From Zygnema circumcarinatum SAG 698-1b (taxonomy: Eukaryota; Plantae; Zygnematophyceae), in the NCBI GenBank assembly GCA_037447605.1, contig CM074816.1, positions 1,007,873 through 1,071,872 of the forward strand: a stretch of DNA of 64,000 nt. Direction: 5' to 3'. Positions 11,884 through 56,299 of the stretch are shown here, piece after piece; within the stretch, counting starts at the first letter, position 1; every line of letters begins with the position of its first letter. The translations under genes were made by a program, and so were the position numbers. A model generated the notes under the pieces. It saw only the letters and a list, made by a program, of their open reading frames with translations. It searched no databases and had not been told where the DNA came from.

Positions 11884-12163
11884 GACGTCACGCTGACGCG
11901 ATTTTCGCCAGTATTTTCTTCGCTCGTCCATTTCGGCGCCTCTTTTGGGTGCGAACAAAATCGTGCGAAGAAGTGCCCTTTTTAGTAAACCCCACGGGTC
12001 AATCTTCGTAACGTTGACCCGTTGACTTAGCACAGTTGACTTCCGTTCGGTTCGGTTTAGGTTCGGGGGCGCGATGATTTTTAGTACTTAGTAACCTCGA
12101 TTCTCGTAATACTAAAAACTCGATATTCGTAACATTTTGTTAAGTCTGACACCCCCTATTGTA

Positions 12164-12750: not shown

Positions 12751-12756
12751 TACTGT

Positions 12757-30298: not shown

Positions 30299-33200
30299 CA
30301 GTAGGACCCCGTCATATTTTCCACCTTCAAAAGTGCGTCCTGTAGCGTAACGGAGCTGCGTTCGACGGATCCGCGCCCGTTCAGTTGTACTTGACATGTT
30401 CATATTCAGTGTCACGGACCGGCCTGATCCAGGAATTGCCGACGGAAAATGCGAGACGGCGGCGCCATTTGTTGGCGGCCCACGGGACAGCACACCATCC
30501 AGCTAGGCGCACTCGGAAGCGCCGCAAGATGCCGCCGATTGTCATCAGTTGACCTATCCGAAGGCTCCACGTAGTCAGTCAGGCCTCTCAGTGGGCAGTT
30601 GGCCAATCAGAGGCTGTCACTGCTAAGGCTCAAGATCTATTGTCAGTGTTAAGTAGATGGGATGTCAGTGATGCTTTTTTGTCTTTTAGTGCTGGGCTTA
30701 GTATTTGTATTTGCTGTGTGGTTTGTCTTCTTGTTCTTCTCTTCTTCCTCTTCAGTTCCAGCAACAGATGCTAAGTGTGAGAGAGAGAGAGAGTTCCATG
30801 CCATAGATAGAGAGAGAGAGAGAGAGAAAGAGTCTTCTTGCTGATAGCATTTAGACGTCCCATTCAGCCCAGCCAGACAAAGATTTCAGTGAGAAGATAC
30901 TTTCATCAGAATGACAATCCTCACCAACCGCCGGGCCGGGTGACTTTCCAAAATACAACCTTATCTAAGTTGAGTCCCTGCTTCCCTTTGCCGCCACTAT
31001 GCCAAGCTACCATCTTGTTCTATCCTGCCTCACATTCCTCCCAATGACCAATGATAATCTCAAGCCTAGCCAAGAGACTAGCCGGTGAGTAGTGACAGTG
31101 GGAGGAGAGCCCCTGGGCGAAGGGCTCTGCGATCGAGTCCACGGCGGGAACATCTTCGTGATCCTCGGCGGCTCGCTGGGCCCGCGCTGCATCTCCGAAG
31201 TCTCCCGATCCTCGCTCTATGTCGGCAAAGTGCACTACGTAACCCCACCCAACCTCTTCATCGGGCCAAAGACGGACGCTGAAAGCCGCATGTACACTGC
31301 AGAATTCAGCTCAGCCTCTTTAACCCCACTTATCTTGGAAATGAAATAAGGTTTTGCGCATCCACGCATTTGATACGCTAGGTGCTGCCGACCCCCGTGA
31401 CTCGTGTCATGCTCTCGCCATGGATGGCGAGCCGCAATAAGAGGTGGATGCTGCATCTTCAAGTGAGTTTTATGGAGACTTGGGACCTCAAGAAGAACAG
31501 GCGATCCGAAATCCAAGGACGGATTCAGACTCAGAGGAAGAAGCAGTCAGAGAAAGACTGAAGATGGGCATCACCGAAGAGAACCCTTATCCCAGTCTGG
31601 CTTACCTTGAGCAGATCGAAGTCGCATTGAAGAGCCGTTTAATTTTACTCCAGTGCGTGCTGATGGCCATAAACTGGGCCGGCACCGGAACGATCAAGCT
31701 CATAAACGCCTGCCGGGCCGGCCGCCTACCGCATGCCGTGGAGGGCAGTGAGTCCGACCTTGAGGTCCCCACCGCTGCCCACCAGAGACATGCCACTCTG
31801 AGCCCGGCCGGATAACTACCGCGACTCAGAGTCCCTTCAAGCGCCGCCAGCCGCAAGAGACGCACCCCACAGCAGAGCAAGGGATTCCTGTAAGACACCT
31901 ACCCTCCGGGCGTCGCTGCCACAACTTACCCAACTGTAGCCCTGTGCGAGCAACCTTCAGGCGGCGGACGCATCGCGAAGCGACCCTCCAGCTTTCAGCA
32001 GACCAACCTCAAGCAGAGAAGACACGAGTCGAGATCTCGAAGTTTCCCACAAGATGGACGAGATGATGACCAAATTGATAGCAATGATTCCTGAAAAGAG
32101 TGAGGTGAGGGATACCACGGGCATCATCACAAGAGGCTTCACCGGCAAGCAGGAAGATGCGGAAGCCTGGCTGAGACATCTTGAGGAGAAGGCAGCTTAA
32201 AGGTGACTCAAGGAAGACCCGGATCAAGCCGCCCTTTGAGCTACCGGAAGGAGAGGCGCCAATCGAAGTCGCCCCAAACTGGCACGCGTATGTCGCCGCA
32301 ACCGACAAAGACACATTCAAGCAAGCTTTTGTGACAACGCCGGATTTCGCATCCAATCACTCGCGACCGACTGGGCTACATAGAGCGCTACGCTGATGAG
32401 CCGCCGCTCAATTCACCGGAAGCGCTTCAGGCGCGATGGCAACAATGACGAGAACTTGCCCACTTTCCCCGGTTCTCCAAAGGGTTCCGCAAGGCCATCA
32501 CGTAGAAGGATCTCCACTGATCGTGAGCCGCGCTGACAACCCACCGCCAGATGCCCGGTGCCTTGTTAGAAAGGGCGTGGTTTAATTCTATGATCAAGAG
32601 AGAGGCAAGTAACCATTATGTACTGTAATTCACATTACATGAACGCCAAGGTGATCCACGACAAGATCGACTTCCTACCAGCGCCTCAAGACAATAATCG
32701 CCAATCGTATGATCCCTTACGCTACATCTTCTGTAGAACAAGCCATCTTTCTCCTGCATCCCCGCCAGACGCCCCGCAACCCTATGCGGTGCTCGCTATA
32801 GCCGCTACTCAAGCTTCCCTTCCCCTTTCCCCCGCACTTCGCGATCCGGCGCATCCCATTGAGCCGTGAATCCTCACATACCGTATGCTTCTCGCCCAGA
32901 TATTCTGCCTTTATTCCTATCGCAGACACCAAGAGAGAGAGAAGTCGCCAGGTCATCTCAGGCTGGGCCGGATGACGAGGCAGGGGTTCTAGAGGGCGCT
33001 CGCCTTGCCTCGCTGCCCACCATAACTGCTGCCGCTAGGACCATGGACTCCGCGACTTCGGCTGCATCACTCGGACATGATGCCCGTGTATGCATGCGGA
33101 GACTCTCAAGTGAGAAGGCCCGAAAGGGGAAAGAGGCAGCTGCAGGGAGCTCACCTGCAGAGATCACCTTCATGGACATGCTCCCGGCTACTCCCACACC

Positions 33201-36200
33201 ACCGAGAACTCCGGCTCCCTTTCGCCCGCCTCCACCTCCTTCACCCGCTTACACCATCCTGCAACGACCGCCTATCCACCTGCACCCCATGGACTCCCCT
33301 TCCCTGACAAACGCATTGGGTGCTGAGCCCGATCCTGCTGCCCGCTCACGCACTGCCCAGATTGCCGCAGCATTGCAACCGGCTTGGTCCGAATCCCCCA
33401 TCACTTCAAAAGAGGGTGCTCAAGCCTGGATCGCCGAGATTGCAAATGCCTTGCGCAGGCTCCCTGTCAACCAAAGTGATCCTCATTCACATCCCCTGCC
33501 ATTCCTCCCTGCCGATGTCAACGGCGCCAGCTCCTCTGGCACGGCTCCACCGGTCGCCACCCCTTTCCGGAGAACTTCANNNNNNNNNNGGTGATAGCTG
33601 CACCCAGCTTTCCCCCACACGAGACCATTGGTGATGAGGAGTGGCAGGAAATAGAGGGTCAGATGCGATTGGGGCCAGCAGTCCATTCAGACCCGATCAA
33701 GCATTCACAATTACGCCAAGTGCTGCGCCGAAATCATCTAGTTTTCGCACGACATTCACTCGACATTGGCAAGACCCACCTGATAGAGCACCACATCGAT
33801 ACGGGGGATGCACCTCCCGTGATGACCATGACTCCATACCGCTTTTCCGCCGCTCAGCAGGCCGATGTCGAACGACAGATCGATGAGAACGTGGGTGCCG
33901 GCTTGATGGAACCTGGAGAAGGGCCTTGGGCCACCCTACCGCTCGCCCCAAAGCCGGATGTGGCACACTCACGCCTGCGGGAGACTATCTAAATCAATGC
34001 CATAACGGCGGGGATCCTTATAATGCTGCACGGGATGTGGACTGATTCTCCACGGTGTCTCCCCGAGGATCATGGTGGTTCTCGTGGGCTCCTGCATACG
34101 TTGAATCCTTTCCTCGTAGATCCTCGCGACAAAGCCGATCAGCCAAGAAGATAGAGCCAGCATACCAATGCCGCTTCGTGGCAAAGGGACGGTGCTTCCC
34201 TTTGGGCTCAAGAATCTCCAGCCAGACTCATACTCAAATACCGCCAACCAGGTGTTCGCCCCCGCTGTCTTCAAGGAACCTTTACGCTGATGATGCTTCA
34301 TCCACAAAGAAGGATCGGGTCCTTCCCACCGCAAATACTGACCAAGTCCTCGCATCAGCCTTATCAAGGCCACCAAGATTGCACCCAAGAAGTGCAAATG
34401 GGGCCATCAGGAGATCACTCATCTCGGGCACCGCCTCGGCATCAATGGCCTGAAACCATCACTCGACAAGATTGAAGCGATTGCCCTTATGCCGATTCCA
34501 CAGACCCTCACTCAGCTCAAGTCCTTCTTGGGGCTCACCTCATTCTATCGCCGGTTCATCAAGGGCTATGCCCTTATCGCACGTCCCCTACATGCCTTGG
34601 AGAAGCACGGAGTCCAATACGAATGGAGCCGAGCGCAGGATTTGGCCTTCCACGCGCTCAAGAGTGCCCTCCTTCAGGCTCCTTGTCTGCATCAATTTGA
34701 CCCCACCCTGCCAACCATCATTGACGCTGACTGGAGTCAGACGGGATTTGGGGCAGTGGCCAGTCAAGCCTTTCCGGATGGGGAACACCCGGTCAGTTAT
34801 GCTAGCAGGGTTTGTTTGGAAACCGAGACCAAGTACAGCCCTACAAAGGGTGAGGCCGCGGCTATCCTCTGGGCACTCGAGAAGTTCAAGCTCTTCACGG
34901 CCTACCAGCCCATTATCATCCGGACTGACCACATGCCCCTCACCTGGCTGCACATCATGGCTACCCTACGCCCTAAGTTTGCACGATGGGTGATGAAGTT
35001 GGAGGAGTATAATGTACTTAAGGTCNNNNNNNNNNCTCATTGGTCCATTTCTAATCCCCGCCACTTTTTGCCGCTTCGCCAACATTGCGCTTGTCGGCCA
35101 TACCTTTCGATTTCGAATTTGTCTTACTCCCTCCTCCACCTCCGGTCCTGCCGATACTCCCCATTGCCGAATAACCGAGGAAGCTTCTCCACACGGCCAC
35201 CGACTCGCCTCCCGTCCACGTCATCCTTGGCTCCTCCCCTGCCCTTTGTCTCTTCTTCCTTGCGCCCGCAGGGGCGTGCGCTTGTTCCCCCCCCCCGGCA
35301 TGTGCTACAGATGTAGCGTAACGGAGCTGCGTTCGACGGATCCGCGCCCGTTCAGTTGTACTTGACATGTTCATATTCAGTGTCACGGACCGGCCTGATC
35401 CAGGAATTGCCGACGGAAAATGCGAGACGGCGGCGCCATTTGTTGGCGGCTCCACGGATAAAGATAATTATCCAGTTTAGTGCACTCTAAGTCGCCGTAG
35501 TATGCCGCCATTATTACTGCTGACTCATCCTAAGGCTCTATAGGCCGGCCAGCCCACGCGCTGGCCAATCGTAGGCCGCTACCGCTAAGGCTCAAGATCT
35601 ATTGCCAGTGTTAAGTAGATGGGATGTCAGTGATGCTTTTTGTCTTTTAGTGCTGGGCTTAGTATTTGTATTTGCTGTGTGGTTTGTCTTCTTGTTCTTC
35701 TCTTCTTCCTCTTCAGTTCCAGCAACAGATGCTAAGTGTGAGAGAGAGAGAGAGTTCCATGCCATAGATANNNNNNNNNNCCCAAGGAAGGGCTCTTTGC
35801 GCATCGAGTCCAGCCGCCGGTGGGAACATCTTCAGGATCCCTGCGTCTTCCGCTGCGCGTACCTCTGAGTCTCCCGGATCCTGGCTCTATGCTGCAGGCA
35901 GACCCACAGAACCGACCCAACCCTTCATCAGTTTCAGCACAGACGCGCGAGTGGCCGTACAGCACCTGCAACTAGCTCAACAGTCTCCTTTTAACCCCAC
36001 TTATCTTGTGCCACAGTCCCGAAGAAATTCGCCCCGATTTTGCCGAAACCACCTTTTTGTACGGTAACTTTGAGTTAGCCGTACTATTCGTACGATCCAC
36101 ACTATCCGTACTATTCGTACTAACCGTACTACCCGTACTAGCTGTACTAGCCGTCACGGGCTTACACAAAACTCACCTATTCTCCCCGCAAGTGCCGCCG

Positions 36201-36468: not shown

Positions 36469-36558
36469 TACTGTACAGTAACAGTACAGTACTGTACTGT
36501 GCAATCCGCCGCCCGACCGTACAGGGTGCTGTCCGTACACGTCCGCGGCCCTGCTGTA

Positions 36559-36700: not shown

Positions 36701-38300
36701 CGAAATCTGTTACGGCATATGTACTTCACCAATAAGAGCTCGTGTAGTTAAATGTACAGCACCACTAGGAGCTCGCGACAGGACCCGTGTAGCACAAGAT
36801 AAGTGGGGTTAAAAGGAGATTGTTGAGCTAGTTGCAGATGCTGTACGGCCACCCGAGCGTCTGTGCTGAAACTGATGAAGGGTTGGGGTGGTGCTGTGGG
36901 TCTGCCTGCAGCATAGAGCCAGGATCCGGGGGATTCAGAGGTACGCGCAGCGGAAGACGTAGGGATCCTGAAGATGTTCCCTCCGGCGGCTGGACTCGAT
37001 GCGCAAAGAGCCCTTCCTTGGGGCCTCTCCTCCCCTGTCCTCTCCTCGGCTAGTCTCTTCGCTAGGCTTCTAGTTATCATTGGTCATTGAGAGGAATGTA
37101 AGGCAGGATAGAACAAGATAGGGGCTTGGCATAGTGACAGCAAAGGGAAAACAGGACACAACTTAGATAAAGGTGGTATTTTGGAAACTCACCCCAGCCA
37201 TCGGTTGGCTGGGGAATGTCATTACAATGAAAGTACCTTCTCACTGAAATCTTTGTCTAGCTGGGCTGAATGGGACGTCTAAATGATCTCAGCAAGAAGA
37301 CCCTTTCTCTCCCTCCCTCTCTATATCTATGGCATGGAACTCTCTCTCTCTCTCACACTTAGCATCTGTTGCTGGAACTGAAGAGGAAGAAAAGAAGAAC
37401 AAGACAACAAACCACACAGCAAATACTAATACTAAGCCCAGCACTAAAAGACAAAAAAGCATTACTGACATCCCATCTACTTATCACTGACAATAGATCT
37501 TGAGCCTTAGCACTGACAGTCCCAGATTGGCCAACTGCCCACTGAGAGGCCTGACTAACTATGTGGGGCCTTCTAATAGGCCAACTGCTGACAATCGGCG
37601 GCATTTTGCGGCGCTTCTGAGTGCGCCTAGCTGGATGGTGTGCTGTTCCGTGGGCCGCCGCCTTCACATGGCGCCGCCTTCTCGCCTTTTCCGTCGGCAA
37701 TTCCTGGAGCAGGCCGGTCCGTGACACTGAATATGAAGATGCCAAGTACAACTGAACGGACGCGGATCCGTCGAGCGCAGCTCCGTTACGCTACATCTGT
37801 AGCACATGCCGGGTGGGGAAAACAAGCGCCCGCCCCTGCGGACGCAATGAAGAAGAGACAAAGGGCAGGGGAGGAGCCAAGGATGACGTGGACGGGAGGC
37901 GAGTCGGTGGCCGGGTGGAGAAGCTTCCGCGTACATTCGGCAAGGGGGAGCATGGGCAGGACCGGAGTGGAGGGAGTAAGACAAAGTCGAAATCAAAAGA
38001 TTCGGCCGACTGGCGAACTGGGGACAAAGTGGCAAAAAGTGGCGGGAAGTAGAAACGGACCAATGAGGAGTCGTCATGACAGGGGGGGGTACGAGGAGAC
38101 CGCGCTGTTGGTTGCAAACGCTCAGCCATCGCGGGGGGGAGGAACTGCGGACGTGGCGGCACGAATGTCGATCCAGTGTGAACGCCAGCGCCAGGCGTTT
38201 CCACCAGAGTCAGGGCCTTCCGAAATGATGGCCCAACCTGGGATCTCCGACGGACCGACACAAATGAAGGGGCCCAACCACGGAAAAGCCNNNNNNNNNN

Positions 38301-40465
38301 GAATGCTTAGATTCTGTCGCGTGAACTTCCACCCACTTGGTGTATCTGTCCACGGCTAGGAAGACCCGAATGTAGCCAGAGGGGGTGCCGAGCTGGGGGA
38401 TAGAAAAGGTGTCGATGTTCCAGTCTTCGGCGACGCCGCGTATCGGGATCTCACCCATCTCGAGGGGTTGGCGGTCGGGGGGAGCAGAGCGCTTGCCGCG
38501 TTGGCAGCGGGTGCAGGTTTCGATGTAGCGGCTCACGGCGCCATGGAGGCCGGGCCAATAGTAGCGTTCCTGCAGCAGGGCCACCATCTTCTTCTGGCCG
38601 AGGTGGAAGCCTGCAGGTTGGGCATCGTGGGCAACGTCCAGGATTTCCATACGCTCGTTAGGGAAGGGAATAGGTATGCCGGAGGGGAGGTAGAGAATCT
38701 GTCCTTCATCATCGACAGAGAATTTCCGAGCGCGGCGGAGCAGCCGAGCCCTCGCGGTGTCCGTGACAAAAGGGGGCAATGTGCGGGTCATGACGTAGCG
38801 CAGAAGGGAGGAGTCGGAATGGACGTCATTGGCGCTGGGGAAATGGGGAGGAAGAAAGGGAGCTTCACCATCGTCATCCATGAGGAGTTCCCACGGATCC
38901 GCATGGGGGTGGCCGTGGGTGAAGTCAGGGTCTTGCCAGCGATGGAGGGTGGTGGCCGTGGCCGGAATATCGATCAGCCCATCTGCGAATATGACATCAT
39001 GTAAGTCTTGCTCTGCAATAAAAATCTCAATGGGAAGATGCTCAGGGTTCAAGAGGGTGGGTGGAGGGATGGGTTCAGGAACGGCCGGATCGTGGCAGAG
39101 GAGGGGAGCCGAGGGATTGCGACTGAGGCCATCAGCATTGTCGTGACTACGGCCAAAACGGTGAGTGACTTTGAGTACATTATACTTCTCCAACTTCATC
39201 ACCCATCGTGCAAACTTAGGGCGTAGGGTAGCCATAATGTGCAGCCAGGTGAGGGGCATGTGGTCAGTCCGGATGATAATGGGCTGGTAGGCCGTGAAGA
39301 GCTTGAACTTCTCGAGTGCCCAGAGGATAGCCGCGGCCTCTCCCTCAGTAGGGCTGTACTTGGTCTCGGTTTCTGAACAAACCCTGCTTGCATAACTGAC
39401 CGGGTGTTCCCCATCTGAGAATGCTTGACTGGCCACTCCCCCAAAGCCCGTCTGACTCCAGTCAGCGTCAATAATGGTGGGAAGGGTGGGGTCGAATTGA
39501 TGCAGACAAGGAGCTTGAAGGAGGGCACTCTTGAGCGCTTGGAAGGCCAAATCCTGCGCGCGGCTCCATTCGTAGTGGACTCCGTGCTTCTCCAGGGCAT
39601 GTAGGGGACGCGCAATAAGGGCATAGCCCTTGATGAACCGACGATAGAATGAGGTGAGCCCCAAGAAGGACTTGAGCTGAGTGAGGGTCTGTGGAATCGG
39701 CATAAGGGCAATCGCTTCAATCTTGTCGAGTGATGGTTTCAGGCCATTGATGCCGAGGCGGTGCCCGAGATGAGTGATCTCCTGGTGGCCCCATTTGCAC
39801 TTCTTGGGTGCAATCTTCAGACGCGCACTGATAAGCTGTTGCAGGACTTGGTCAATGTGTTGCAGGTGGGAGGACCAGTCCTTGCTGTGGAGGGAACCAT
39901 CATCCACGTAAGGTTCGCAGAAGGCACGACAGGGGCCGAACACCTGGTTGGCCAGGCGCTGGTGAGTCTGGCTGGAATTCTTGAGCCCGAATGGAAGCAC
40001 TGTCCACTGCACGAAGCGCGTGGCTGTGCGAAGCCCTGTCTTGCAGCGATCGGCCTGTCGCAAAGGGATCTGCCAGAAGGATTTCTGCATGTCAAGTGCC
40101 GAGAACCACCGGTCATCAGGGGAGACGCCGTGGAGAATCAGGTCCACATCCGGTAATGTATAGGGATCCTACTTCGTTGTTGCATTCCGTTTCCGGTAGT
40201 CCCCACAGAAGCGGAGTGTGCCATCCGGCTTTGGGGGCAGAACGGCCGGGCTGGCCCAAGGCCCTTCTTCGGGTTCCATCAAGCTGGCAGCCACGTTCTC
40301 ATCGATCTGTCGTTCGACATCGGCCTGCTGCGCGGCGGAAAAGCGGTATGGAGTCAGGGTCATCACGGGAGGCGCATCCCCCGTATCGATGTGGTGCTCA
40401 ATCAGGTGTGTCTTGCCGATGTCGAGTGAATGTCGTGCAAAAACTAGGTGATTTCGGCGCAGCAC
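38301..40465 (-). CDS. pol: Family D pol: RT, RNase H, integrase (frameshifted near 40150, truncated at a gap)
   Basis: LRFCGDYRKRN, LDMQKSFWQI, PFGLKN, YVDD; DADWS..PVSYASR, TDHMPL; HD..H..C..C zinc finger; VDRYTKW. Confidence 0.93.
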
Positions 40466-40590
40466 TTGGCGTAGTTGAGAATGCTTGATCGGGTCTCAGA
40501 GGACTGCAGGCCCCAATCGCATCTGACCCTCTATTTCCAGCCACTCCTCATCACTGATGGTCTCGTGGGGGGGGAAGCTGGGTGCAGATA

Positions 40591-41540
40591 TCACTGGCGG
40601 CAACAGTTCCTCCGTCGGCGCACAGAGGGCTGGACCCGGAGGAGCAGGANNNNNNNNNNAGCTGGACTCGGAGGAGCTGGAGGGGGAGTCTCGTCATCGG
40701 TATCAGAATTGGCCGATCCATAAGAAGAATGGGGGCTGCCGACCGAATGGTACATGGTGATCTCTGGGTAGGAGACCTCTGCCGTGGCATGGCGTTTGGG
40801 GAAGGCGGAGGTGGTAAGGGACTCGAGGATGATGGGGAAGGAGCAGTCTGTCCCGCCAGCAGATAAGTGCAGCTGACATGTAGCAAAGTCGATTTGTGCT
40901 CCCATCGCAATGAGCCAATCTGAGCCCAGCAGGATAGAATAGTGTTTTGCGGCCGTGATGACCGCATTCACCGTGGCTCCCATCTCGCCAAGGCTGATGA
41001 TCACTTGGGCGCTGCCCAATCCTTCATGTAAACTCCCTTCAACCCCCACATATCGGGGAATGGGCTCAAGTGTCTTGTCCAACTTAACCCCTGCAGCCTT
41101 CATTACTGGCTTGGACAGAACTGTGCGCATAGCTCCTGTGTCGATCATGGCTTTGCTGGGATGACCGTTGAGCCATACATTGACAATGATTTGCACGTTG
41201 GGTGTGGGGATCAGAGGGAGGATCTGAATCTGGCGAGGAGGATGGCGGGGAGAGCAAACTGGGTCCGGAGGAGGTGCCGTGGCCATGTGGTGGATATCGG
41301 CCGGTGAGGGGATGTCCAGAGGAGGTGCCGTGGGAACCGGGGGAGGCCGCATGGTGGCCTCTGCACTGTCGGCCAGCTTACGAACTACGGCTGCAGCACC
41401 TGGTACCAACTGCATCAACTGGGACAAGGTAATGCCGATCTTAGCCTTGTCTCCCATGAGCTGATGCACCATGCGTTCAATCAGGGATACACCGTCTGTC
41501 GGTGGGGGTGGTCGACGATCGGCTGCTTGGGGGTAGAAAC
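40591..41540 (-). CDS. Family D gag C-terminus and aspartic protease
   Basis: KAMIDTGAMRTVLS retropepsin motif; the ORF is cut at 41540 by the GAAAC-bounded insert. Confidence 0.88.
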
Positions 41541-43626
41541 TGTTGGTGCAAGGGGCAGCAAGAAAGGAAAGACACAAGGAAAGGGCAACACATGCCCTGG
41601 GTATCAGAGCTCAAAACTTTTCTTTTTCTTCTCCTTGGGCCACATACCGCTTCCGCCACGATATGCCTTCTCGTCCACCTCTTGCCAGGTGCGCACAGCG
41701 GAAACTAAACTCCCCACCTCAACAAGTGCACTTCTTCATCTCCTCCATGGTCTCGCCTCCTCAACTCCACGCTCCTCCAATGATCTCCTCGTGTGGAGCA
41801 ACACACCGCCCATACAATGGTCGCCTCCACTCATCCACCACGTCAATCCAACACGAGGACTCACATGACAAATGATACAGTAGTGAGGAGAAAGCCCACG
41901 GCCCCAAAACTCCTTAAACTCCATGAGTGTAATACAAGCTCTTCTTGGAAATCTACATAATCCCTTATGCTAGATTCTCCTCCTCTCATGAGCACTATCC
42001 TATCCTCTCATAGATAGCCTACACCCCAACTGCAGTAGCCAAGCACTACTTGCCTCCATGAACTCCTCCTCTACCTCAACACATGAGGGACATGTGAGAG
42101 GGGCAGAGGGATGAGAAGCAAATTCACCTTCCACCCTTTCTCCCTCTTCACTGTCCATGGAAACTTCCCTCCTGGTGCCCGCAGCACTCTCACTCATTTT
42201 TCACTCACGTGCATACACAACACACGAGAGGCGGAATAGAAAAACGTAGGAGAAAGCTCCCAGCCTAAAACTCCTTTATGATGACAAGCTTTCCAACTCA
42301 AGCCCCCATAAGCCTAGTCAAGCTTTCACCACATGATCACTTCACCTTCACGTGAGGCAGCTCNNNNNNNNNNTTGCCAAAGCCATGCCTTCAAACTGCC
42401 ATAGCCTTGCAATGCATATCAAGAAGGTTTCTAACTTACACACCCACTCTCACTATATAGTATGGGGCTGTGACGTGACCATGTCACGTCACACGCGCCG
42501 GGACCATGCATGCAACAACCTTATTCAAACAACCTAAATAAACTACTTCGTGTCTTGCTATGCATAGTACACCCAGCCTGGCAACGTACCAACACCACCG
42601 CCCTAACCCAGATGGCCATGTACTCTACCGCCGAAATAACTTCCCCGCCACCCACAAGGACTATCTTCCGTATCGCCAGTAGTGGCTCACCGACTCCACC
42701 CATTCTCGCCTTTGTCACAAGATCAGTCCACGATTCCGTACGCCAAGACCGATTCCTCGGCGCGGTACCAAATGTCGGACTCCCGGCCGTAGTGTCCGTA
42801 CCGACCGTACGGTCTGTACGGTCCATACTATCCGTACGGTTGCGCGGTCGGTCTCGCCGCCGCGCGCACGCTGAAGTAAGTCCGTCCCCATACATGTCAC
42901 ACCTAGAAGCACACCCCTAGGAACTAAGCGCCAACACAAACATGCTAATCTGAACTAACTATGTACACTAACAGGACACACCATCTAGCTTCTTCACTAA
43001 AGCTTAGCATGATGAGAGCTAGTTCCTTCACGACCTTCATACACAAGGCCGGACTCCTCTAGGCCTCAGCCTCAGCCTACTCTTCCTATACAACAACGTT
43101 CGAGCAGCATAACATTCAGAGAGAGTGAGTGAGTGAGAGAGCCAAGCTTGCTCCCTCTTAAACTATGGCGGCCGGCGTGACGTGACCACCGATGTCACGT
43201 CACAGGCGCACTAGCAAGCGCATGCATTCAACAGCCAGCAAGCCGTTCAACGGCCAGCTACGCGTTCAACAGCCAGCTACACGACTTCACGTAAACCTAC
43301 ACCAGCATCGACCTACANNNNNNNNNNGCGACCAATCATGTCGCTTCGTGCAGATCCGCCTCTCGCGCCAAATATCTTCTCGTCCATACGTTTCGCGTCG
43401 TCCGTACAGTCGCGCGCCGTCCGTACGGCCGCGCTCCTTTTCGGTCAAGCACATTCCGTGCACCCCCTTTGGTACGATCTAAGCCTAAGCCGTAATTCCA
43501 CGACCCTAGACCTTCCCTAGACCTGCCGTACCATGCCCTATCGATACGGGCACCCCCCATGTTCGGTCCTACACCAAACATGACCAACATGGTCAACCTC
43601 CCGCCGTTAGTGCTTTCACTCGGAAA

Positions 43627-44258
43627 ATGTCCGAGGCGTTACAGAGGGCAAGGCAGACCCTGTTAGCAGCCCAGTCGCGGCAGAAAGCCTATGCTGATCG
43701 TCGTCGTGCTGCATTAACCTTCGCTGTAGGCGATCAGGTACTGCTGAGCACGTCGAACTTGCGCCTGAAGACTTACGGCGGAACCCGTAAGTTGTGGCCT
43801 CGCTTCATGGGACCTTTTTCGGTCGTGAAGCGAATCGGTGAGGTCGCTTACCGGTTGGCTTTACCGGCTCATATGAAAGTGCATCCGGTCTTTCACGTGG
43901 GTCTTCTTAAGGCATACCGCAGCGATGGGGGAGTCCAACCACCTCCCCCTCCAGTGGAAGTTGAGGGTGACCTCGAGTATGAGGTAGAGACCATCCAAAC
44001 CCACAGGACTGTGAGTAGAGGTCAGACTTCCCGCCACGAATATCTCGTGAAATGGTTGGGCTATGGGGTTGAACATAGCACGTGGGAACGTGAAAGCAAT
44101 CTGACAAATTGCAAGGAGCTCCTGAGATTGTACTGGGAGGCGCAGACCGCTGGTGAGCGGGCGAGGGCGGCTAGGGGGGTTCCCGAACCGTCCACGCGCT
44201 ACTCGGAAAGGGACTTGACCGGGATTAACGCTGAGCCCTCCCGTACACCCCGCAGACA
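43627..44258 (+). mobile_element. Orphan chromovirus 3' fragment: integrase C-terminus plus chromodomain
   Basis: FMGPFSVVKR..HPVFHVGLLK; YEVETI..YLVKWLGY..STWE; paralogous to 50724-51250. Confidence 0.85.
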
Positions 44259-44268
44259 NNNNNNNNNN

Positions 44269-47200
44269 GAACCATCTGGCCCCCTCTTCAGCTGGATCCC
44301 CAAGAGATATTGGGCCTCTCCAAGGTCAGTCATCTGGAAATTCTCCTGCAAGAGCTCCTTCAACTCTGCAATGCTGCGAAGAGACTTGCTGATCATGATC
44401 AGGTCATCCACATAGACCCCAACAAACAACTTATCATCATCTTCGCCAACTGAGTACACACAAGTATCAGTCTCAAAACGATCAAACCCATAGCCCTGTA
44501 AGAGTTCATCGATCTTCTCATACCACACGCGAGGGGCCTGCTTCAGCCCATACAAACTCTTCACGAGTCTGCACACAAGGTTCTCCTTTCCCTTCTCGCG
44601 TTTCCCCTCTGGCTGCTCCATGTATATCTCTTCATCAAGATCTCCATACAAGAAAGCAGTCTTGATGTCCAACTGGTGGACATGCATCCCCTCTGCGGCT
44701 GCAATAGAAATGAGGGAGCGGAGGGAGTTGAACTTCACCACAGGAGCAAAGGTCTCTGTGTAGTCAATCCCCTCCTTCTGACTGTAGCCCTTGGCCACAA
44801 GTCGCGCCTTGTACCTATCGATGCTGCCGTCCGCCTTCCTCTTAACCTTGAAGACCCATTTGCAGCCGATGGCACGCCTCCCAGGTGGGAGCTTCTCCAA
44901 GCGCCAAGTCTGATTCTCAATCAGACTGTTCCACTCACTATCAATGGCCTCCTGCCACTTGATCTGATCTGGCCCCTCAACAGCTTCCCCGTAAGTCTGA
45001 GGCTCAACAGCATGGGCCATGTAACAATGGGCAATCATGTCCATGTCACCTGAGAATGATGCAGAATGATCCTGGGCATTCTTTCGTGCTTTCTTCCGCA
45101 TGCGCTTCGTAGGCACAGCCGGACTGAAACGATTTGGAGGCCGCCTGGTCCTCCCACTTGTCTTCTCCATCACAGAGGGATGCTCTTCAGGCTGCTCCAC
45201 AGCTCGCATTGGAGCTGACACTTCCTCCTCTGGCTCATCAGCCATCTCCTCCAGCAACTCTTCATTCGCCGCTGCACGTGGTTCTGAAGCCACCAACTTA
45301 TGCGGCATGCTGGCTGTCTCCTCTCGTGAACTGGAGGTCTCCTCCTGAGACTTCGTAGCTGATGCCTCCACCGATGGTCCCACAGACTCCTGCATGTCTC
45401 CCCAATGTGGAGAACCCAAGGGAGTAAAGGTCACCGGTTTTGTCTCATCATCACTCTCTGACTCTACAGGCCGTCGTGAATGAATGGGCGTGGCACTCTC
45501 CTCCGTCTGAGCTTGAGTGGCCACTGGCACCTTCTCCTGCTCAGGGTGACTCACAATCACTTCACCTTCATAGGTGAATCCGAGTGGACACGACTCATCA
45601 GCACGCCTCCATGAGTGGGTAAAGGGGACGTGTGCAGCATCCTCATCCACCCTCACGTCCCTGCTGATCTCTACCTTCTTGGTCTCAAGGCTATACACCC
45701 TGTAAGCCCTGCAATCACTGGCGTATCCAAGAAAGAAGCCCTCCTTGCCCCTTGGGAAAAACTTCCCTCCACGCGCGACCTTCGGTATCGCATACCAGCA
45801 CTTTGATCCAAATGCTTTCAAGTGTCCCACAGTGGGCTTCGTCCCACTCCACACCTCATCAGGCACTCGATCCTCCAAGACCGATGACGGACACCTGTTC
45901 CTCACATAAGCGGCAGTCATCACTGCTTCTCCCCAAAATGTCACAGGAAATGGTGAGTCATGCAACATCGTCCTTGCCATGTCTCCAAGAGTCCTGTTCA
46001 CTCTCTCTGCAGCTCCATTACTCTGCGGTGAGTATGGAGCAGAGAACTCCTGCTTGATTCCCAAGCCTCTCAAATACTCACTGAACACCTTGTTCTTGAA
46101 TTCTCCTCCATTGTCTGAACGGAGGTTCTTGAGTAGATGGCCGCTCTCCCGCTCTGCACGCATCTTCCAAGCTCTGAAGGCTGGATAAGCGTCAGACTTC
46201 TGTGTCAAGAGCACCACCCAAATCTTTTCGTGAGTAGTCATCAAGGAAAGTGATGAAATATCGACTTCCTCCCAAGCTCGCTGGGGTGATGGGGCCACAC
46301 AAGTCTGTGTGCACAAGCGCCAACGGCTCCTTGGCGCGCCCCTCTCCATCTCCTCTTCGCACGAATGGCCCACGATGGATCTTCCCTTTAATGCAGTCTT
46401 CGCAAATCCTCTGTGGATCAACCGCACCCTCCAAGTCCAAGCCTCGGACCAACCCCTTCTGAGCTAACTCCCGCATGGCTCGAAAACTCACATGCCCAAG
46501 CCTCCTATGCCACTTCTGCACCTCATCTTGGGTCATAAGCAAAACTGACTCTCCTTCTTCTTCAGGCTTACTCCACTGTAAGACGTACAGGCCCTCTCTC
46601 CGGTGCCCCTGAAATAAGACATTCCCAGTTTTCTTATGTCTAGCCACGCAATTCTGCTTATCAAAAGTGACTGAGTAACCCCTGTCGCACACTTGTCCCA
46701 CAGACACAAAGTTGTGCTGCAACCCAGGGGTATAAAGCACGTTACCAATCATGGTAGCTGCCCCTTCACTCTCTCCTCCTAAGACGATCCTCACGTCGCC
46801 TCCGCTGGTCACCTTCACTTCCTCACCGGTCGCTGACTGAACTGAACGAGGGGCCTGGAGCGATCTCATCTCGTAGAACAACCCCCAGTCTGCACACATG
46901 TGCGTCGACGCCCCTGAATCAATGAGCCACGGCTTCTCGGGTCCTTCACACATTCTCCCCACAAACTCCACATGCTCCTTCTCAGCAAACATCAAGTTTG
47001 TATCAATAGCAGCACTTCTGCAATCAATGCTCTTGTGACCCTTCTTCTTGCACTTGAAGCAAGCGCCTGTGAACTCCTTCTTGCTCGACTTCGTCTTGGC
47101 GTCCCCTCCCTTCACTTGGGCCGCCTTGCCGGAACGGCACTCGTTGGAGTAGTGACCTGGCTTCCCACAAGTGAAGCATGTCCCCTTGGGACGATCTCCG

Positions 47201-47988
47201 CCACCTCCTCCTTTCGCCTTGCCTTTCCCAAAAGGCTTCCCCTTCATCGCCAACACGCTCTCACTCGCATCGGATGCGTCATGAAGAGCGTCCTCTTCAC
47301 GAATCCGCTTCTTCACCTGCTCAAAGGTCAAAGAAGAAGTGGTAAGAACTGTTCGAAGGGCGCTGCATGTGCCGTCAAAGCGACTGGGCAAACCAACCAA
47401 GAACTGGCTGATCTTATGATCTGACTCAAGACCCTTGCCCATCACCACGAAGCGCTGCATGAGACTGTCAAAGCGCCCCATGTAGTCAGTCAGCTTCTCA
47501 TCCAAGCTCATCTTCATCTTCCCGAGCTCCGTGTACAGGTGCACCACTGTGACGCTGTCCTTCGCATCGTACATGTCCTCCAAACACTTCCACATCTCGT
47601 GTGACGTGCTGAGGTCGTAGAGCATGTGTGAAGGCGTCCCCTTCACACTCATTGCAATCTGAGTGATGGCCTTGTTGTCACGGGCCTTCCACTTTGCAAG
47701 CTCCTCCACGGATGTAGCCGGCGGCGCCTTCACCTTCCCAGTCACATGACCAAGAAGTCCCTTCCCTTCAAGTATGGGAGTCAGCCGCCACTTCCATCCC
47801 TTGTAGTCTGTCCCATCAAATGCAGGGACATTAAACTTCACACTAGCCCCGGTTTCCTCTTCACCATGAGCTCTGATACCACTTGTGAGAGGGGCAGAGG
47901 GATGAGAAGCAAATTCACCTTCCACCCTTTCTCCCTCTTCACTGTCCATGGAAACTTCCCTCCTGGTGCCCGCAGCACTCTCACTCAT
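44269..47988 (-). CDS. pol: Copia E Gag-Pol (one extra A near 46228; truncated at a gap)
   Basis: FDGTDYKGWK gag, two CCHC knuckles, WLIDSGAS, WHRRLGH..C..C, rve, RT HQLDIKTAFL and YVDD. Confidence 0.92.
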
Positions 47989-49741
47989 TTTTCACTCACG
48001 TGCATACACAACACACGAGAGGCGGAATAGAAAAACGTAGGAGAAAGCTCCCAGCCTAAAACTCCTTTATGATGACAAGCTTTCCAACTCAAGCCCCCAT
48101 AAGCCTAGTCAAGCTTTCACCACATGATCACTTCACCTTCCGTGGCTGACTCTCCACATACGGAGGAGACTCTCACAAGGAGTCCCTCACCATTGCCAAA
48201 GCGGCCGCTGAAACTGCCATAGCCTTGCAATGCATATCAAGAAGGTTGCTAACTTACACACCCACTCTCACTATATAGTATGGGGCTGTGACGTGACCAT
48301 GTCACGTCACACGCGACGGGACCATGCATTGCAACAACCTTATTCAAACAACCTAAATAAACTACTTCATTGCTATGCATAGTACACCCAGCCTGGCAAC
48401 GTACCAACACCACCGCTCTAACCCAGATAGCCATGTACTCTACCGCCGAGCTGAACTTCCCGCCGTCACCCACAAGGACTATCTTCCGTACGCAAAGTAG
48501 GCTCCGCCGACTCCACCGACTTCGCCGCCTTTTGCCGCCGCATCAGTCCACGATTCCGTACGCCAAGACCGATTCCTTGGCGCGGTACCAAATGTCGGAC
48601 TCCCGGCCGTAGTGTCCGTACCGACCGTACGGTCTGTACGGTCCATACTATCCGTACGGTTGCGCGGTCGGTCTCGCCGCCGCGCGCACGCTGAAGTAAG
48701 TCCGTCCCCATACATGTCACACCTAGAAGCACACCCCTAGGAACTAAGCGCCAACACAAACATGCTAATCTGAACTAACTATGTACACTAACAGGACACA
48801 CCATCTAGCTTCTTCACTAAAGCTTAGCATGATGAGAGCTAGTTCCTTCACGACCTTCATACACAAGGCCGGACTCCTCTAGGCCTCAGCCTCTGCCTAC
48901 TCTTCCTATACAACAACGGTCGAGCAGCATAACATTCAGAGAGAGTGAGTGAGTGAGAGAGCCAAGCTTGCTCCCTCTTAAACAATGGCGGCCGGCGTGA
49001 CGTGACCACCGATGTCACGTCACAGGCGCACTAGCAAGCGCATGCATTCAACAGCCAGCAAGCCGTTCAACGGCCAGCTACGCGTTCAACAGCCAGCTAC
49101 ACGACTTCACGTAAACCTACACCAGCATCGACCTACACAAGGTCATCCGTACTGTTCCGCCACCGGCCGTACACGTCCGCCGACCAGCCGTACATATCCG
49201 CCGCCCGCTCAAGTGCTGACTCGGTCCCCTTCTGAGTTGACCTCGTCAGAGCCGCGGACCGCACTAAGGGTCCACGCAATGCCACGTGCCGCCTCCTCAT
49301 TCGCCGCCGACATCTTCAGTCTCTCAACCGACTTCCGCGTCACGTCACGCCCGAAGACTGCGTCGCTATCTGCACGCTGGCGCGACCAATCATGTCGCTT
49401 CGTGCAGATCCGCCTCTCGCGCCAAATATCTTCTCGTCCATACGTTTCGCGTCGTCCGTACAGTCGCGCGCCGTCCGTACGGCCGCGCTCCTTTTCGGTC
49501 AAGCACATTCCGTGCACCCCCTTTGGTACGATCTAAGCCTAAGCCGTAATTCCACGACCCTAGACCTTCCCTAGACCTGCCGTACCATGCCCTATCGATA
49601 CGGGCACCCCCCATGTTCGGTCCTACACCAAACATGACCATTCATACATGACATTGTCCCTATACCACCACATTGATGTCCAGGACAACATCCATGCTAG
49701 GAACTAAGTACCAACACCTTGATGTACCCTATACATCAACA

Positions 49742-50549
49742 GAAACGGGCTGCCCGAGGGCGATGGGGAGGGTTGACGTGCATTTCCTCTGTCGCCGGTG
49801 CTGTCGCCTCTGGCTGCGCCGCTGTCGGCTCCTCCTCATTGAGATCTTCAATTTCCTCCTCAGGCATGGATCCCAAGGGATGACCCGTGGAAGAAGGGAG
49901 GACTGAAGTTCTTCGGACAGGGGTGGCGACCGGTGGAGCCGTGCCCGAGGAGCTGGCGCCGTTGACATTGGCAGGGAGGAATGGCAGGGGATGAGAATGA
50001 GGATCGCTTCGGTTGACAGGGAGCCTGCGCAGGGCAGTTGCAATCTCGGCGATCCGGGCTTGAGCATCCGCTTCAGTAGTGATGGGGGATTCGGACCAAG
50101 CCGGTTGCAATGCTGCGGCAATCTGGGCAGTGCGTGAGTGGGCAGCAGGATCGGGCTCAGCACCCAATGCGTTTGTCAGGGAAGGGGAGTCCATGGGGTG
50201 CAGGTGGATAGGCGGTCGTTGCAAGATGGTGTAAGCGGGTGAAGGAGGTGGAGGCGGGCGAAAGGGAGCCGGAGTTCTCGGTGGTGTGGGAGTAGCCGGG
50301 AGCATGTCCATGAAGGTGATCTCTGCAGGTGAGCTCCCTGCAGCTGCCTCTTTCCCTTTTCGGGCCTTCTCACTTGCGAGTCTCCGCATGCACACACGGG
50401 CATCATGTCTCGTGATTTGGCAGAAGGTGCAGGTCCATGGTCCGCAACGCAGCCGCGGATTATGATTCAGGCCGCAGGCAAGACAGACGCCCTCTGGAAC
50501 CCCTGCCTCTGTCATCCTACGGCGCAGATCGGCCCTGGCAGCTTCTCTC
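49742..50549 (-). CDS. gag: Family D gag, middle part with Cys/His motifs
   Basis: CLACGLNHNPRLRC and CTFCQITRHDARVC; near-identical to 33060-33579. Confidence 0.8.
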
Positions 50550-50723
50550 TGTAACAACTGAAAAACGCCTTCTTCAGCCTGCGCGGAATTGCACTTAACC
50601 AGCACTCAGAGTTCAGAGAGAGAGAGAGGGAGAGAGCTTCAGAGTGGGGAGCAGCCCGGGGTGGGCGTGCAACCGTATGCCGGTACGTTGGTTGGGTGAC
50701 GACAGTCCCCCTCNNNNNNNNNN

Positions 50724-55300: not shown

Positions 55301-56285
55301 CTTTGGCTCTGATACCACTTGTTGATGCAGCGCCCTCCCTTGGTGGGGCTGCCACTTCTCCTCTAGCACTTGTAGAACTCGACAACTGCAATGAATTGCT
55401 CAATCACACAAAGCACATAAATGCAGAGAACAACTCAGCCCGGAAATATGAAAATGTAAGGAGAGAGCCACCAGCCTAAAACTCCTTAAGATAAAGATGA
55501 AATACAACTTGACAACACTAGAGCCAAGCTTCAAGCACCTCTACTCAAGCTACGTGAATAAACCACCCACTACAAGCTGAACTCTTCCCACTATCTCCTA
55601 GGCCCTAAGCAAGATAGCCTCACTCCCCAATGTGAGTCACGAGAAGGTTAACTTCTACCAAGTGACATGATGTCACGTCACGGCCGCACATGCTACGCCT
55701 TGCAAGACCCTTATCCCGATCCTAATCTCGCGCCGTTGGATCCTCGTAGGCTTGCACGGATCCAGCACATCATTGCCGTCAGATCCGCCTCAGCCTTATC
55801 TCCATCCGAGTCCTCCACCGTAGGATCTGACTCCTCATTACTTGGCGTCATGTGGGACCCCGTAAGCCTACGAGCGCCACCGACCTAGGCCGTACAGGCC
55901 TTCCCTTTCACCCGACACGTGGCGCCTTCCGATTCGCCACTGTCCTCCAAATGAGACATTGCTGACTCTGTACCTCGTCAGTTCTGCTCCGCGCGCTGGT
56001 TCGCGCCTCGTCACTTCTCGATTTGTCGCGTCGCGCCACGTCACATCTGACGCTGCGCCGCGCGCCTCTCGACAATGTCCGTACATTCGGGAGTCCTGGC
56101 CTTCCAAATCGTACCACTGATTGGCTCCACCGACGACCGATGCCTTGCGCTTGCCAAATCAGACTCTACTTATTTGCACACCGCAGGAGCTTGTACGGTG
56201 CCTAGACGACCCTCCGTACAATGTGGACAACATGGCGCACCTCCTTAGAACTTGGTACACCATGACTTGAGTGTACAACTGGTTC
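52389..56285 (-). mobile_element. Internally deleted, non-autonomous copia (family C) inserted in chromovirus pol
   Basis: LTRs 52389-53420 and 55320-~56285; PPT complement at 53421; PBS 55317-55306; ~1.9-kb decayed gag/protease interior. No matching TSD is seen at the right junction. Confidence 0.8.
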
Positions 56286-56299
56286 ACTGTACTTTCTGT

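What the first reader, a model, noticed from the sequence alone, without database searches (positions are those of the whole stretch)
36788..37806. Independent second insertion repeats the same non-canonical 3' end
Seen on the minus strand: B at 37806-37798, GA, core 37795-36797, B at 36796-36788, then flank. Its 5' LTR (62922-61925) has no B on either side and abuts a perfect PBS. Two insertions at different sites sharing all four junction types argue for a family trait rather than one mutation. GCTACA-GA-TGTAGC is itself an inverted repeat of the two attachment ends.
Basis: seen in the sequence. Interest (0 to 1): 0.8.

Follow-up and report, generated by a model that had tools for sequence, protein, structure and literature searches.

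The report
Retrotransposon with a split terminal repeat
Two independent copies of a Ty3/gypsy-type plant retrotransposon keep the last 9 bases of their right end next to the 3' repeat instead of next to the primer site, an arrangement that textbook reverse transcription cannot copy, though with two copies in a draft assembly the mechanism is only inferred.

Summary
On the minus strand the order is B (TGTGCTACA, 37806-37798), GA, a 999-bp core A (37795-36797), B again (36796-36788), then a 4-bp target duplication. The partner LTR (62922-61925, 98.4% identical) has no B and abuts the 12-base plant tRNA-Met primer site.

A second copy (30341-36015, plus strand) has the same four junctions. An uninterrupted paralogue of its target (about 12660-12785) shows that it is a separate insertion and that B belongs to the inserted DNA.

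The element is Ty3/gypsy-type (protease, RT, RNase H, integrase zinc finger), not copia. It has no polypurine tract. Three canonical copia neighbours end in ...CA, 1-2 bases, then the primer site.

The layout A1...B1-GA-A2-B2 is formally a split direct repeat, or an LTR-LTR junction palindrome. Canonical reverse transcription cannot template the outer B.

My best inference (confidence about 0.35) is that B is re-copied each cycle from the inner B when the two cDNA ends are juxtaposed, and that integrase then cuts the palindrome. Rivals are entry by recombination into resident LTRs, defective copies of a canonical family, and scaffold chimerism. No further copies were found in any searchable collection.

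The parts
36788..62922 (-). Whole element ('ins2'): a Ty3/gypsy-type LTR retrotransposon, about 26 kb as it stands. Two blocks of unrelated nested LTR elements interrupt its internal region.
   Evidence: LTR pair 98.4% identical. Internal pieces are colinear with the other copy. It is flanked by the 4-bp duplication CGGG.
62923..62926 (-). Target-site duplication, 5' side (CGGG)
61925..62922 (-). 5' LTR, core A1 only. It starts TGTAGC and ends ...CTTATCT, with no B on either side.
61913..61924 (-). Primer binding site TGGTATCAGAGC, abutting A1. Its first two bases (TG) are also the last two bases shared by both LTRs.
   Evidence: PMC3852365 describes this 12-mer as complementary to plant tRNA-Met.
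37791..61912 (-). Internal region with gag-pol, given as one part. Domain hits: protease about 40861-41190, RT about 39755-40114, RNase H about 39182-39568, integrase zinc finger about 38489-38659. The integrase core is not seen; an assembly gap lies where it should be.

Broken by: 2 nested-insertion blocks, at least 1 in-frame stop in RT-RNase H-integrase, and no frameshift detected there. Two assembly gaps lie in the element's own sequence.
   Evidence: The closest solved relative is the Ty3 Gag-Pol polyprotein, 7q5b, E = 4e-51.
37798..37806 (-). B1: inner copy of the 9-base right terminus (TGTGCTACA)
37796..37797 (-). GA spacer between B1 and the 3' LTR. It is the centre of the palindrome GCTACA-GA-TGTAGC.
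36797..37795 (-). 3' LTR core A2 (999 bp)
36788..36796 (-). B2: outer 9-base right terminus. Its last six bases are the inverted repeat of the LTR start.
36784..36787 (-). Target-site duplication, 3' side (CGGG)
30341..36015 (+). The other copy ('ins1'), incompletely assembled with three ten-N gaps.

Its features: A1 at 30341-31335; decayed primer site from 31336; B1 at 35301-35309; GA at 35310-35311; A2 at 35312-36006; B2 at 36007-36015 (one mismatch); duplication GTCC at 30337-30340 and 36016-36019.
12660..12785 (+). Uninterrupted paralogue of the target of ins1, in the opposite orientation. GGAC is present once, at 12709-12712.

Best explanation
What it is (shown). The region is the 3' LTR of a Ty3/gypsy-type LTR retrotransposon. 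The element has a plant tRNA-Met primer site, 1.0-kb LTRs, TGTAGC...GCTACA termini and a 4-bp target duplication. The two LTRs of a copy differ at their right edge. The 9-base right terminus B is present at the outer end of the 3' LTR. A second copy of B lies 2 bases upstream of the 3' LTR. B is absent between the 5' LTR and the primer site. The layout is therefore A1-PBS...B1-GA-A2-B2, where PBS is the primer binding site. This is a split direct repeat, and B1-GA-A2 has the form of an LTR-LTR junction.

How it most likely works (inferred).
- The RNA runs from A1 to A2 and contains only B1.
- In textbook reverse transcription the right end of the cDNA is whatever lies just upstream of the primer site. 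Here that is ...CTTATCT(TG), which has no CA attachment end.
- B2 must therefore be re-made from B1. I propose that the left end of the cDNA keeps an 11-base extension, B-GA. This extension would be either the plus-strand primer copied into DNA or a plus strand that starts upstream of B.
- The two cDNA ends would then be joined or bridged, by ligation or by a template switch guided by the shared TG. That creates A-B-GA-A.
- The integrase would cut the palindrome after the CA on each strand, 2 bases apart. The cut leaves TGTAGC... on the left and ...TGTGCTACA on the right, which is what is found integrated.
For: Structure and independence.
- All four junctions are present in two independent insertions.
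- The empty-site paralogue proves that B2 is inserted DNA and that the duplication is 4 bp.
- B is exact at three sites and has one mismatch at the fourth.

Type of element.
- Pfam finds protease, RT, RNase H and the integrase zinc finger, in Ty3/gypsy order.
- The best solved relative is Ty3 Gag-Pol.

Why the canonical cycle fails.
- By the textbook model (my knowledge), U5 of both LTRs is copied from the 5' end of the RNA, which here lacks B.
- Three copia families in the same window are canonical, with ...ACA, 1-2 bases, the primer site, and a purine tract before the 3' LTR. The anomaly is therefore specific to this family and not a habit of the assembly.

Fit of the model.
- Removing B-GA from the left and adding B on the right is exactly a circular permutation of a cDNA whose repeat is B-GA-A.
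- The identity between the two LTRs extends through the TG shared by the primer site and by B.

Precedent.
- Retroviral integrases cut the palindromic LTR-LTR junction internally and leave processed ends (PMC1180852, PMC1905944).
- Split A1-B1-A2-B2 repeats, with internal copies that pair with the termini, are known in tyrosine-recombinase retroelements (PMC4157794).
Against: - Only two copies exist, both in a draft scaffold. No further copy was found in any collection.
- No purine tract lies before B1 or before the LTR. No purine run of 7 or more occurs within 495 bases upstream. The proposed plus-strand start therefore has no sequence support.
- The B1/LTR-start hairpin is no more stable than in shuffled sequence.
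- The model predicts LTR pairs that are identical at birth. The older copy's pair is instead a block mosaic.
- This copy's LTR pair has 4 differences in the left half and 12 plus one indel in the right half.
- No junction-containing DNA (A-B-GA-A) has been seen.
Confidence: 0.35

Rival explanations
1. Entry by homologous recombination. The cDNA of this lineage (A-PBS...B1-GA-A) has no right attachment end and cannot be integrated by its integrase. It enters the genome by recombining with a resident canonical LTR (A-B, with its own 4-bp duplication). B2 and the duplication come from the resident LTR. B1 is a relic or has another role.
For: - It reproduces the whole layout, including the duplication.
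- It predicts LTR pairs that are mosaic at birth. The older copy's LTRs are 99-100% identical in two segments and about 50-70% identical in the two divergent blocks, with a symmetric substitution spectrum.
- This copy's LTR differences cluster in the right half, and CpG decay does not explain that.
- Recombination of retrotransposon cDNA with genomic LTRs is established in yeast (my knowledge).
Against: - No canonical resident LTR (solo A-B, or A-B next to a primer site) exists in the window.
- The block pattern in the older copy does not fit a single crossover in each LTR.
- It does not explain why an exact copy of B sits 2 bases before the 3' LTR in both copies.
- The mosaic could be an artefact of scaffolding.
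Confidence: 0.2
2. The family is canonical (LTR = A+B, then a spacer, then the primer site). Both copies seen here are defective products that lost B at the 5' LTR/primer-site junction. B1 is merely the left arm of an inverted repeat spanning the junction between the internal region and the 3' LTR.
For: - An inverted repeat placed around the PPT/3' LTR junction is documented in Sireviruses and in some classic copia elements (PMC2829016).
- Because the LTR termini are themselves inverted repeats, such an arm automatically resembles the LTR end.
- The missing stretch is flanked by TG on both sides, a possible microhomology.
Against: - Progeny of a parent whose 5' LTR lacks B would lack B at both ends. 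The loss would therefore have to happen independently, and identically, in both copies.
- B1 equals B2 over 9 bases, whereas the perfect inverted repeat with the LTR start is only 6 bases.
- No purine tract lies inside the supposed inverted repeat.
Confidence: 0.15
3. Assembly artefact. Short contigs from several collapsed copies were scaffolded together, so one or more junctions do not exist in the genome as written.
For: - There are 14 ten-N gaps.
- A 156-bp duplicate lies on both sides of one gap, at 51617-51955, which suggests unmerged contig ends.
- The older copy has mosaic LTRs.
Against: - Each junction is short-range and lies well inside a contig.
- One contig (35781-38290) runs from the end of the other copy, through the shared flank, to B2, the whole 3' LTR, B1 and 484 bases of internal sequence.
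- The same junctions are seen twice in contexts that differ by about 10-15%.
- The duplications and the empty site fit exactly.
Confidence: 0.1
4. One aberrant insertion that was later copied by a segmental (inverted) duplication.
For: The two copies lie tail to tail, 772 bases apart.
Against: - Target duplications and flanks differ.
- There is an empty-site paralogue for one copy only.
- Nested elements occur in one copy only.
- Divergence between the copies is far above the divergence within this copy's LTR pair.
Confidence: 0.02

Closest known systems
Ty3/gypsy (Metaviridae) LTR retrotransposons, e.g. yeast Ty3
   Same: - Domain order protease, RT, RNase H, integrase zinc finger.
- The best solved relative is Ty3 Gag-Pol (7q5b).
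- LTRs with TG...CA outer ends, a tRNA-Met primer site and a short target duplication.
   Different: - The 5' LTR lacks the terminal 7-9 bases and ends ...CT next to the primer site.
- A copy of the right terminus sits 2 bases before the 3' LTR.
- No polypurine tract.
- The duplication is 4 bp, not the 5 bp that I recall for Ty3.
- Proteins are at most 41% identical to anything in the protein collection.
Tyrosine-recombinase retroelements with split direct repeats (PAT, TOC, Ngaro, Viper)
   Same: The formal layout A1 ... B1-A2-B2, with an internal copy that pairs with a terminus (PMC4157794).
   Different: - Those elements encode a tyrosine recombinase and no DDE integrase.
- As I recall, they make no target duplication.
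- Their B units are, as I recall, much longer than 9 bp.
- Here there is an integrase zinc finger, a protease and a 4-bp duplication, and no recombinase domain was found.
Palindromic LTR-LTR junction of retroviral 2-LTR circles, cut by integrase
   Same: The end of one LTR (CA), a short spacer and the start of the next (TG) form a palindrome. Integrase can cut it internally to give processed ends (PMC1180852, PMC1905944).
   Different: - In retroviruses the junction exists only in unintegrated DNA, and its role in replication is debated.
- Here a junction-like sequence is a fixed internal part of the integrated element.
- The spacer here is 2 bases.
[quoted passage not shown]
   Same: A short arm just upstream of the 3' LTR is the inverse of sequence inside the LTR (PMC2829016).
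   Different: - Sireviruses are copia-type and have conserved purine tracts inside the repeat.
- Their 5' LTR ends in the universal CA before the primer site.
LTR retrotransposons with non-TG/CA termini (e.g. TARE1; the TGTT and AACA subfamilies)
   Same: The termini are non-canonical and are a family trait (abstracts of PMC3701649 and PMC5659011).
   Different: - TARE1 carries its atypical motif at the start of both LTRs, and the abstracts do not report LTRs of one copy that differ at an edge.
- Here the outer ends are canonical, and the two LTRs of one copy differ from each other.
IS3-family 'copy-out, paste-in' circle junctions (from my knowledge, not tested here)
   Same: Two abutted inverted ends separated by a few bases serve as the substrate of a DDE enzyme.
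   Different: These are bacterial DNA elements with no reverse transcription. The resemblance is an analogy only.

Membership tests
LTR retrotransposon, Ty3/gypsy type | Two long direct terminal repeats | tested here: met
   1001 bases at 98.4% identity
LTR retrotransposon, Ty3/gypsy type | pol domain order protease, RT, RNase H, integrase | tested here: met
   Pfam hits in that order along the minus strand. The integrase core is hidden by an assembly gap, so only the zinc finger is seen. Ty3 Gag-Pol is the best solved relative.
LTR retrotransposon, Ty3/gypsy type | tRNA primer binding site next to the 5' LTR | tested here: met
   Exact 12-mer at 61924-61913. PMC3852365 identifies it as the tRNA-Met complement.
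LTR retrotransposon, Ty3/gypsy type | Polypurine tract immediately upstream of the 3' LTR | tested here: not met
   No purine run of 7 or more in the 495 bases upstream. The best 15-base window is 73% purine and lies 128 bases away.
LTR retrotransposon, Ty3/gypsy type | Both LTRs end in the same TG...CA inverted termini | tested here: not met
   The outer ends are TGTAGC...GCTACA. The 5' LTR ends ...CTTATCT before the primer site and lacks B.
LTR retrotransposon, Ty3/gypsy type | Short target-site duplication | tested here: met
   4 bp in both copies, proved for one of them by an empty-site paralogue.
Split-direct-repeat retroelements (PAT/Ngaro/Viper) | A1 ... B1-A2-B2 repeat layout | tested here: met
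   B is only 9 bases, and a 2-base spacer separates B1 from A2.
Split-direct-repeat retroelements (PAT/Ngaro/Viper) | Encodes a tyrosine recombinase and lacks protease and DDE integrase | tested here: not met
   A protease and an integrase zinc finger are present. No recombinase hit was found in any ORF scanned. One assembly gap leaves part of pol unseen.
Split-direct-repeat retroelements (PAT/Ngaro/Viper) | No target-site duplication (from my knowledge) | tested here: not met
   A 4-bp duplication is present.
Elements that integrate from an LTR-LTR junction | Junction DNA (A-B-GA-A) exists outside the chromosome and is cut by the element's integrase | not testable with these tools
   Only the integrated copies are available.

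The most novel reading that the evidence does not exclude
This would be a DDE-integrase LTR retrotransposon whose repeat as made by reverse transcription (B-GA-A) is offset by 11 bases from the ends used for integration. Every new copy would then have to pass through a joined or bridged LTR-LTR junction, which the integrase opens like a restriction site. That would make the junction an obligatory intermediate rather than a dead-end by-product. It would also be a structural bridge between LTR elements and the split-repeat tyrosine-recombinase retroelements.
Probability: 0.3. Interest if true: 0.85.

Novelty: new variant of a known kind. Interest (0 to 1): 0.6.

Why it matters
If the layout is a heritable family trait, the textbook cycle cannot be the whole story for this family. 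In that cycle both LTR ends are templated from the RNA's own U3 and U5. Here the right attachment end would have to be regenerated from an internal copy, through contact between the two cDNA ends. That would give the long-debated LTR-LTR junction a required role in a natural element.

There is also a practical consequence. LTR-finding programs that set boundaries by LTR identity, and then look for TG...CA and a target duplication, would mis-call such elements. The 9-base B lies between the end of LTR identity and the duplication.

Tried and rejected
- I first took the element for a copia type because of its primer site. Pfam showed Ty3/gypsy domain order.
- By eye, the LTR start resembled the primer site plus leader, and the 20 bases before B1 resembled the LTR end. 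A shuffle test gave no significance (127 and 915 of 1000 shuffles reach the score). I dropped both ideas.
- A stable RNA hairpin formed by B1 and the LTR start is not supported (z = +0.7 and +1.2).
- I tested for coding constraint in the last 280 bases before the 3' LTR. The ORF in both copies stops at the TAG inside TGTAGC. The synonymous to non-synonymous count was 7:17, no better than the other frames. The result is inconclusive.
- I searched for further copies. The 20-mer at the LTR start gave nothing in the metagenome and viral collections. The junction 20-mer gave two hits in the metagenome collection, both chance hits with no flanking homology. The 24-mer spanning the LTR end and the primer site gave nothing in the viral collection.
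- Protein relatives reach at most 41% identity. The contig of the best long relative (L001) has no LTR pair and no such primer site, so it says nothing about the trait.
- I looked for a second empty site for this copy and found none.
- I tried to name the organism from a nested copia pol and from a lectin gene. Only distant relatives came back. It is a plant-like genome that is poorly represented in the databases.
- Hypermutation as the cause of the odd LTR blocks of the older copy is rejected, because the substitution spectrum is symmetric.

Full report
**1. The observation**

- TGTGCTACA (B) at 37806-37798
- GA
- a core that starts TGTAGC at 37795 and ends ...CTTATCT at 36797
- B again at 36796-36788
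- flank

The partner repeat at 62922-61925 is preceded by unrelated flank. It is followed at once by TGGTATCAGAGC at 61924-61913. BLAST aligns the two repeats over 1001 bases at 98.4% identity, and the identity ends after the TG that follows ...CTTATCT.

The exact 9-mer B occurs three times in the window against 0.38 expected, and no shuffle reaches three. All three lie at the predicted edges. The fourth expected site has it with one mismatch.

The 12-mer is described in the literature as the complement of plant tRNA-Met (PMC3852365).

**2. The element and its neighbours**

The 26 kb between the two repeats is one element, interrupted by two blocks of unrelated nested LTR elements. Its own pieces are colinear with the second copy at 30341-36015 on the plus strand.

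It is not a copia element. Pfam finds, in order along the minus strand, an aspartic protease, RT (RVT_1), an RNase H of the RT_RNaseH type and the H2C2 integrase zinc finger. The best solved relative is the Ty3 Gag-Pol polyprotein.

State of gag-pol in this copy:
- 2 nested-insertion blocks
- at least one in-frame stop within RT-RNase H-integrase
- no frameshift detected in that stretch
- 2 assembly gaps in the element's own sequence, one of which hides the integrase core

In the other copy, the one pol piece that aligns carries up to three in-frame stops, depending on the relative used. Three assembly gaps hide the rest.

No tyrosine recombinase or any other domain was found in the remaining ORFs.

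The nearest proteins in the 5.8-billion-sequence collection are only 31-41% identical. A nested copia pol and a legume-lectin-domain gene in the window also have only distant relatives. The source is a plant-like genome that is poorly represented, and I could not name it.

**3. Independence of the two copies**

The copies are flanked by different 4-bp duplications:
- this copy: CGGG at 62926-62923 and 36787-36784
- the other copy: GTCC at 30337-30340 and 36016-36019

In both, the duplication fits only if the outer B is part of the element.

For the other copy the window holds an uninterrupted paralogue of the target, at about 12660-12785 in the opposite orientation. Its sequence matches the right flank up to GGAC and continues straight into the left flank, with GGAC present once. 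This proves three things:
- the insertion is a separate event
- its ends are exactly TGTAGC ... TGTGCCACA
- B2 was brought in by the inserted DNA and not by the target

No such paralogue exists for this copy. The copies are 80-92% identical to each other, against 98.4% within this copy's LTR pair.

**4. What is unusual**

Three copia families in the same window have the ordinary junctions. Their LTRs end in ...ACA at both LTRs, followed by 1-2 bases and the primer site. The one whose 3' LTR start I could place also has a purine tract before it.

In this family:
- the 5' LTR ends ...CTTATCT and has no CA
- the right terminus B appears only at the outer end of the 3' LTR and, as a second copy, two bases upstream of that LTR
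- no purine run of seven or more lies within 495 bases upstream of the LTR

The layout is A1-PBS ... B1-GA-A2-B2. B1-GA-A2 reads GCTACA-GA-TGTAGC, which is the two attachment ends abutted.

**5. Why the textbook cycle does not reproduce it (established knowledge plus inference)**

In the standard model, U5 of both LTRs of a new copy is copied from the 5' end of the RNA. The right end of the cDNA is whatever lies immediately upstream of the primer site. A parent with A directly next to the primer site would therefore give progeny without B at either LTR, and without a CA attachment end on the right.

Yet two independent insertions carry B2 inside their target duplications. The only B in the RNA is B1. 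Either B2 is re-made from B1, or it comes from elsewhere.

**6. Best explanation (inferred, confidence about 0.35)**

Formally, the integrated structure is a circular permutation of a cDNA whose terminal repeat is B-GA-A. Eleven bases (B-GA) are removed from the left, and nine (B) appear on the right.

Two steps would produce this:
- The left cDNA end keeps a B-GA extension and is joined or bridged to the right end. This could happen by ligation, or by a template switch using the TG shared by the primer site and by B.
- The integrase then cuts the palindrome after the CA on each strand, two bases apart.

Retroviral integrases are reported to make just such restriction-like cuts in the palindromic LTR-LTR junction (PMC1180852, PMC1905944). 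Internal repeats that pair with termini, in an A1-B1-A2-B2 layout, are the hallmark of PAT, Ngaro and Viper retroelements (PMC4157794). Those elements use a tyrosine recombinase, which this element does not appear to have.

Weak points:
- nothing in the sequence marks a plus-strand start
- the hairpin is not unusually stable
- the sample is two copies

**7. Rivals**

(a) *Recombination.* The cDNA lacks a right attachment end and enters by homologous recombination with a resident canonical LTR. B2 and the duplication then come from the resident LTR.
- The LTR pair of the older copy speaks for this. It is 99-100% identical in two segments and about 50-70% identical in the two divergent blocks, with a symmetric substitution spectrum.
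- This copy's 16 substitutions and 1 indel fall 4 in the left half and 13 in the right half. Only 2 of them are CpG transitions.
- Against it: no canonical resident LTR is seen, the block pattern does not fit single crossovers, and it leaves B1 unexplained.

(b) *Defective copies of a canonical family.* B1 would then be only an arm of an inverted repeat at the junction with the 3' LTR, as in Sireviruses (PMC2829016). This needs the same loss twice.

(c) *Scaffold chimerism.* The window has 14 ten-N gaps, and one gap is flanked by duplicate sequence. Against it: each junction lies well inside a contig, and one contig spans from the neighbouring copy's end through the flank to B2, the whole 3' LTR, B1 and internal sequence.

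(d) *Segmental duplication.* This is refuted.

**8. Leads that went nowhere**

- An eyeballed likeness between the LTR start and the primer site plus leader was not significant.
- A test for coding constraint before the LTR was inconclusive.
- Pattern scans of metagenome and viral contigs found no relative. The two 20-mer hits are chance.
- The contig of the best long protein relative has no LTR pair.

**9. Verdict**

The element is a new variant of a known kind: a Ty3/gypsy-type element with a 9-base split terminal repeat and no polypurine tract. The mechanism is inferred only, and a census of the family in the source genome would settle most of it.

- My script also carries those coordinates in its code.
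- Every pattern I searched with was read off the window.
- While looking for relatives I looked up the contig of a distant homologue (P0041). One of its neighbouring genes has a weak baculovirus-F-like hit, so it may be an insect virus-like element. No DNA was returned and I did not pursue it.
- The locus L002 (of unknown origin) was fetched but not analysed.

Noticed in passing
window 30341-31335 versus 35312-36006: The two LTRs of the older copy are a block mosaic. They are 100% and 98-100% identical in alignment columns 1-100 and 301-500. They are only about 63-72% identical in columns 101-300 (the 3' LTR is the odd one) and about 50-70% identical in columns 701-1000 (the 5' LTR is the odd one). 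The substitution spectrum is symmetric. This means either recombination or conversion between subfamilies, or a scaffold built from several copies.
   Followed up: partly
window 12161-12785 and 36016-36471 plus 30266-30340: The older copy sits inside a repeat of at least 620 bp. A second, uninterrupted copy of that repeat lies 18 kb away in the opposite orientation. I did not determine what the repeat is.
   Followed up: partly
window 37791-38261 (-) and 34489-35316 (+): In both copies an open frame runs through the sequence before B1, through B1 and GA, and stops at the TAG inside the LTR's first TGTAGC. It gives no Pfam hit, and the two copies show no clear coding constraint between them.
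   Followed up: partly
window 37807-37900 (-): The sense strand just upstream of the 3' LTR is pyrimidine-rich rather than purine-rich, and this stretch is better conserved between the two copies than its surroundings. The only G-rich run (GCAGGGGCGGGCG) ends 20 bases before B1, 31 bases before the LTR.
   Followed up: partly
window 41599-41610 (+): A one-mismatch copy of the tRNA-Met primer site lies on the opposite strand, inside the internal region of the element, and is preceded by a purine-rich stretch. It may be a fragment of another element.
   Followed up: no
window 47870-47881, 55306-55317, 59569-59580 (-) and 13100-13111 (+): These are four further primer sites of the same tRNA-Met type, belonging to other LTR elements. 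Each is preceded by ...ACA and 1-2 spacer bases, the canonical junction. Three of them lie in elements nested within the element studied.
   Followed up: partly
window 51617-51772 and 51800-51955: A 156-bp sequence is present at 99% identity on both sides of a ten-N gap. It looks like two overlapping contig ends that were not merged, so at least some gaps in this scaffold may have zero or negative length.
   Followed up: no
window 16911-17854 and 25419-25750: These are long arrays of short tandem units, with spacings that are multiples of 9, up to 36 bases, and a strong G-over-C skew. They overlap long ORFs. One ORF (23456-25858, minus strand) has a weak TIG domain hit.
   Followed up: no
window 26610-27479 (-): This ORF has a clear legume-lectin domain (E = 1e-32), but its relatives in the protein collection are at most 35% identical. 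The host genome seems to come from a poorly sampled lineage.
   Followed up: partly
window 1999-5034 (+): A 1011-residue open frame of a copia-type polyprotein (zinc knuckle, integrase core, RVT_2) at the left end of the window.
   Followed up: no
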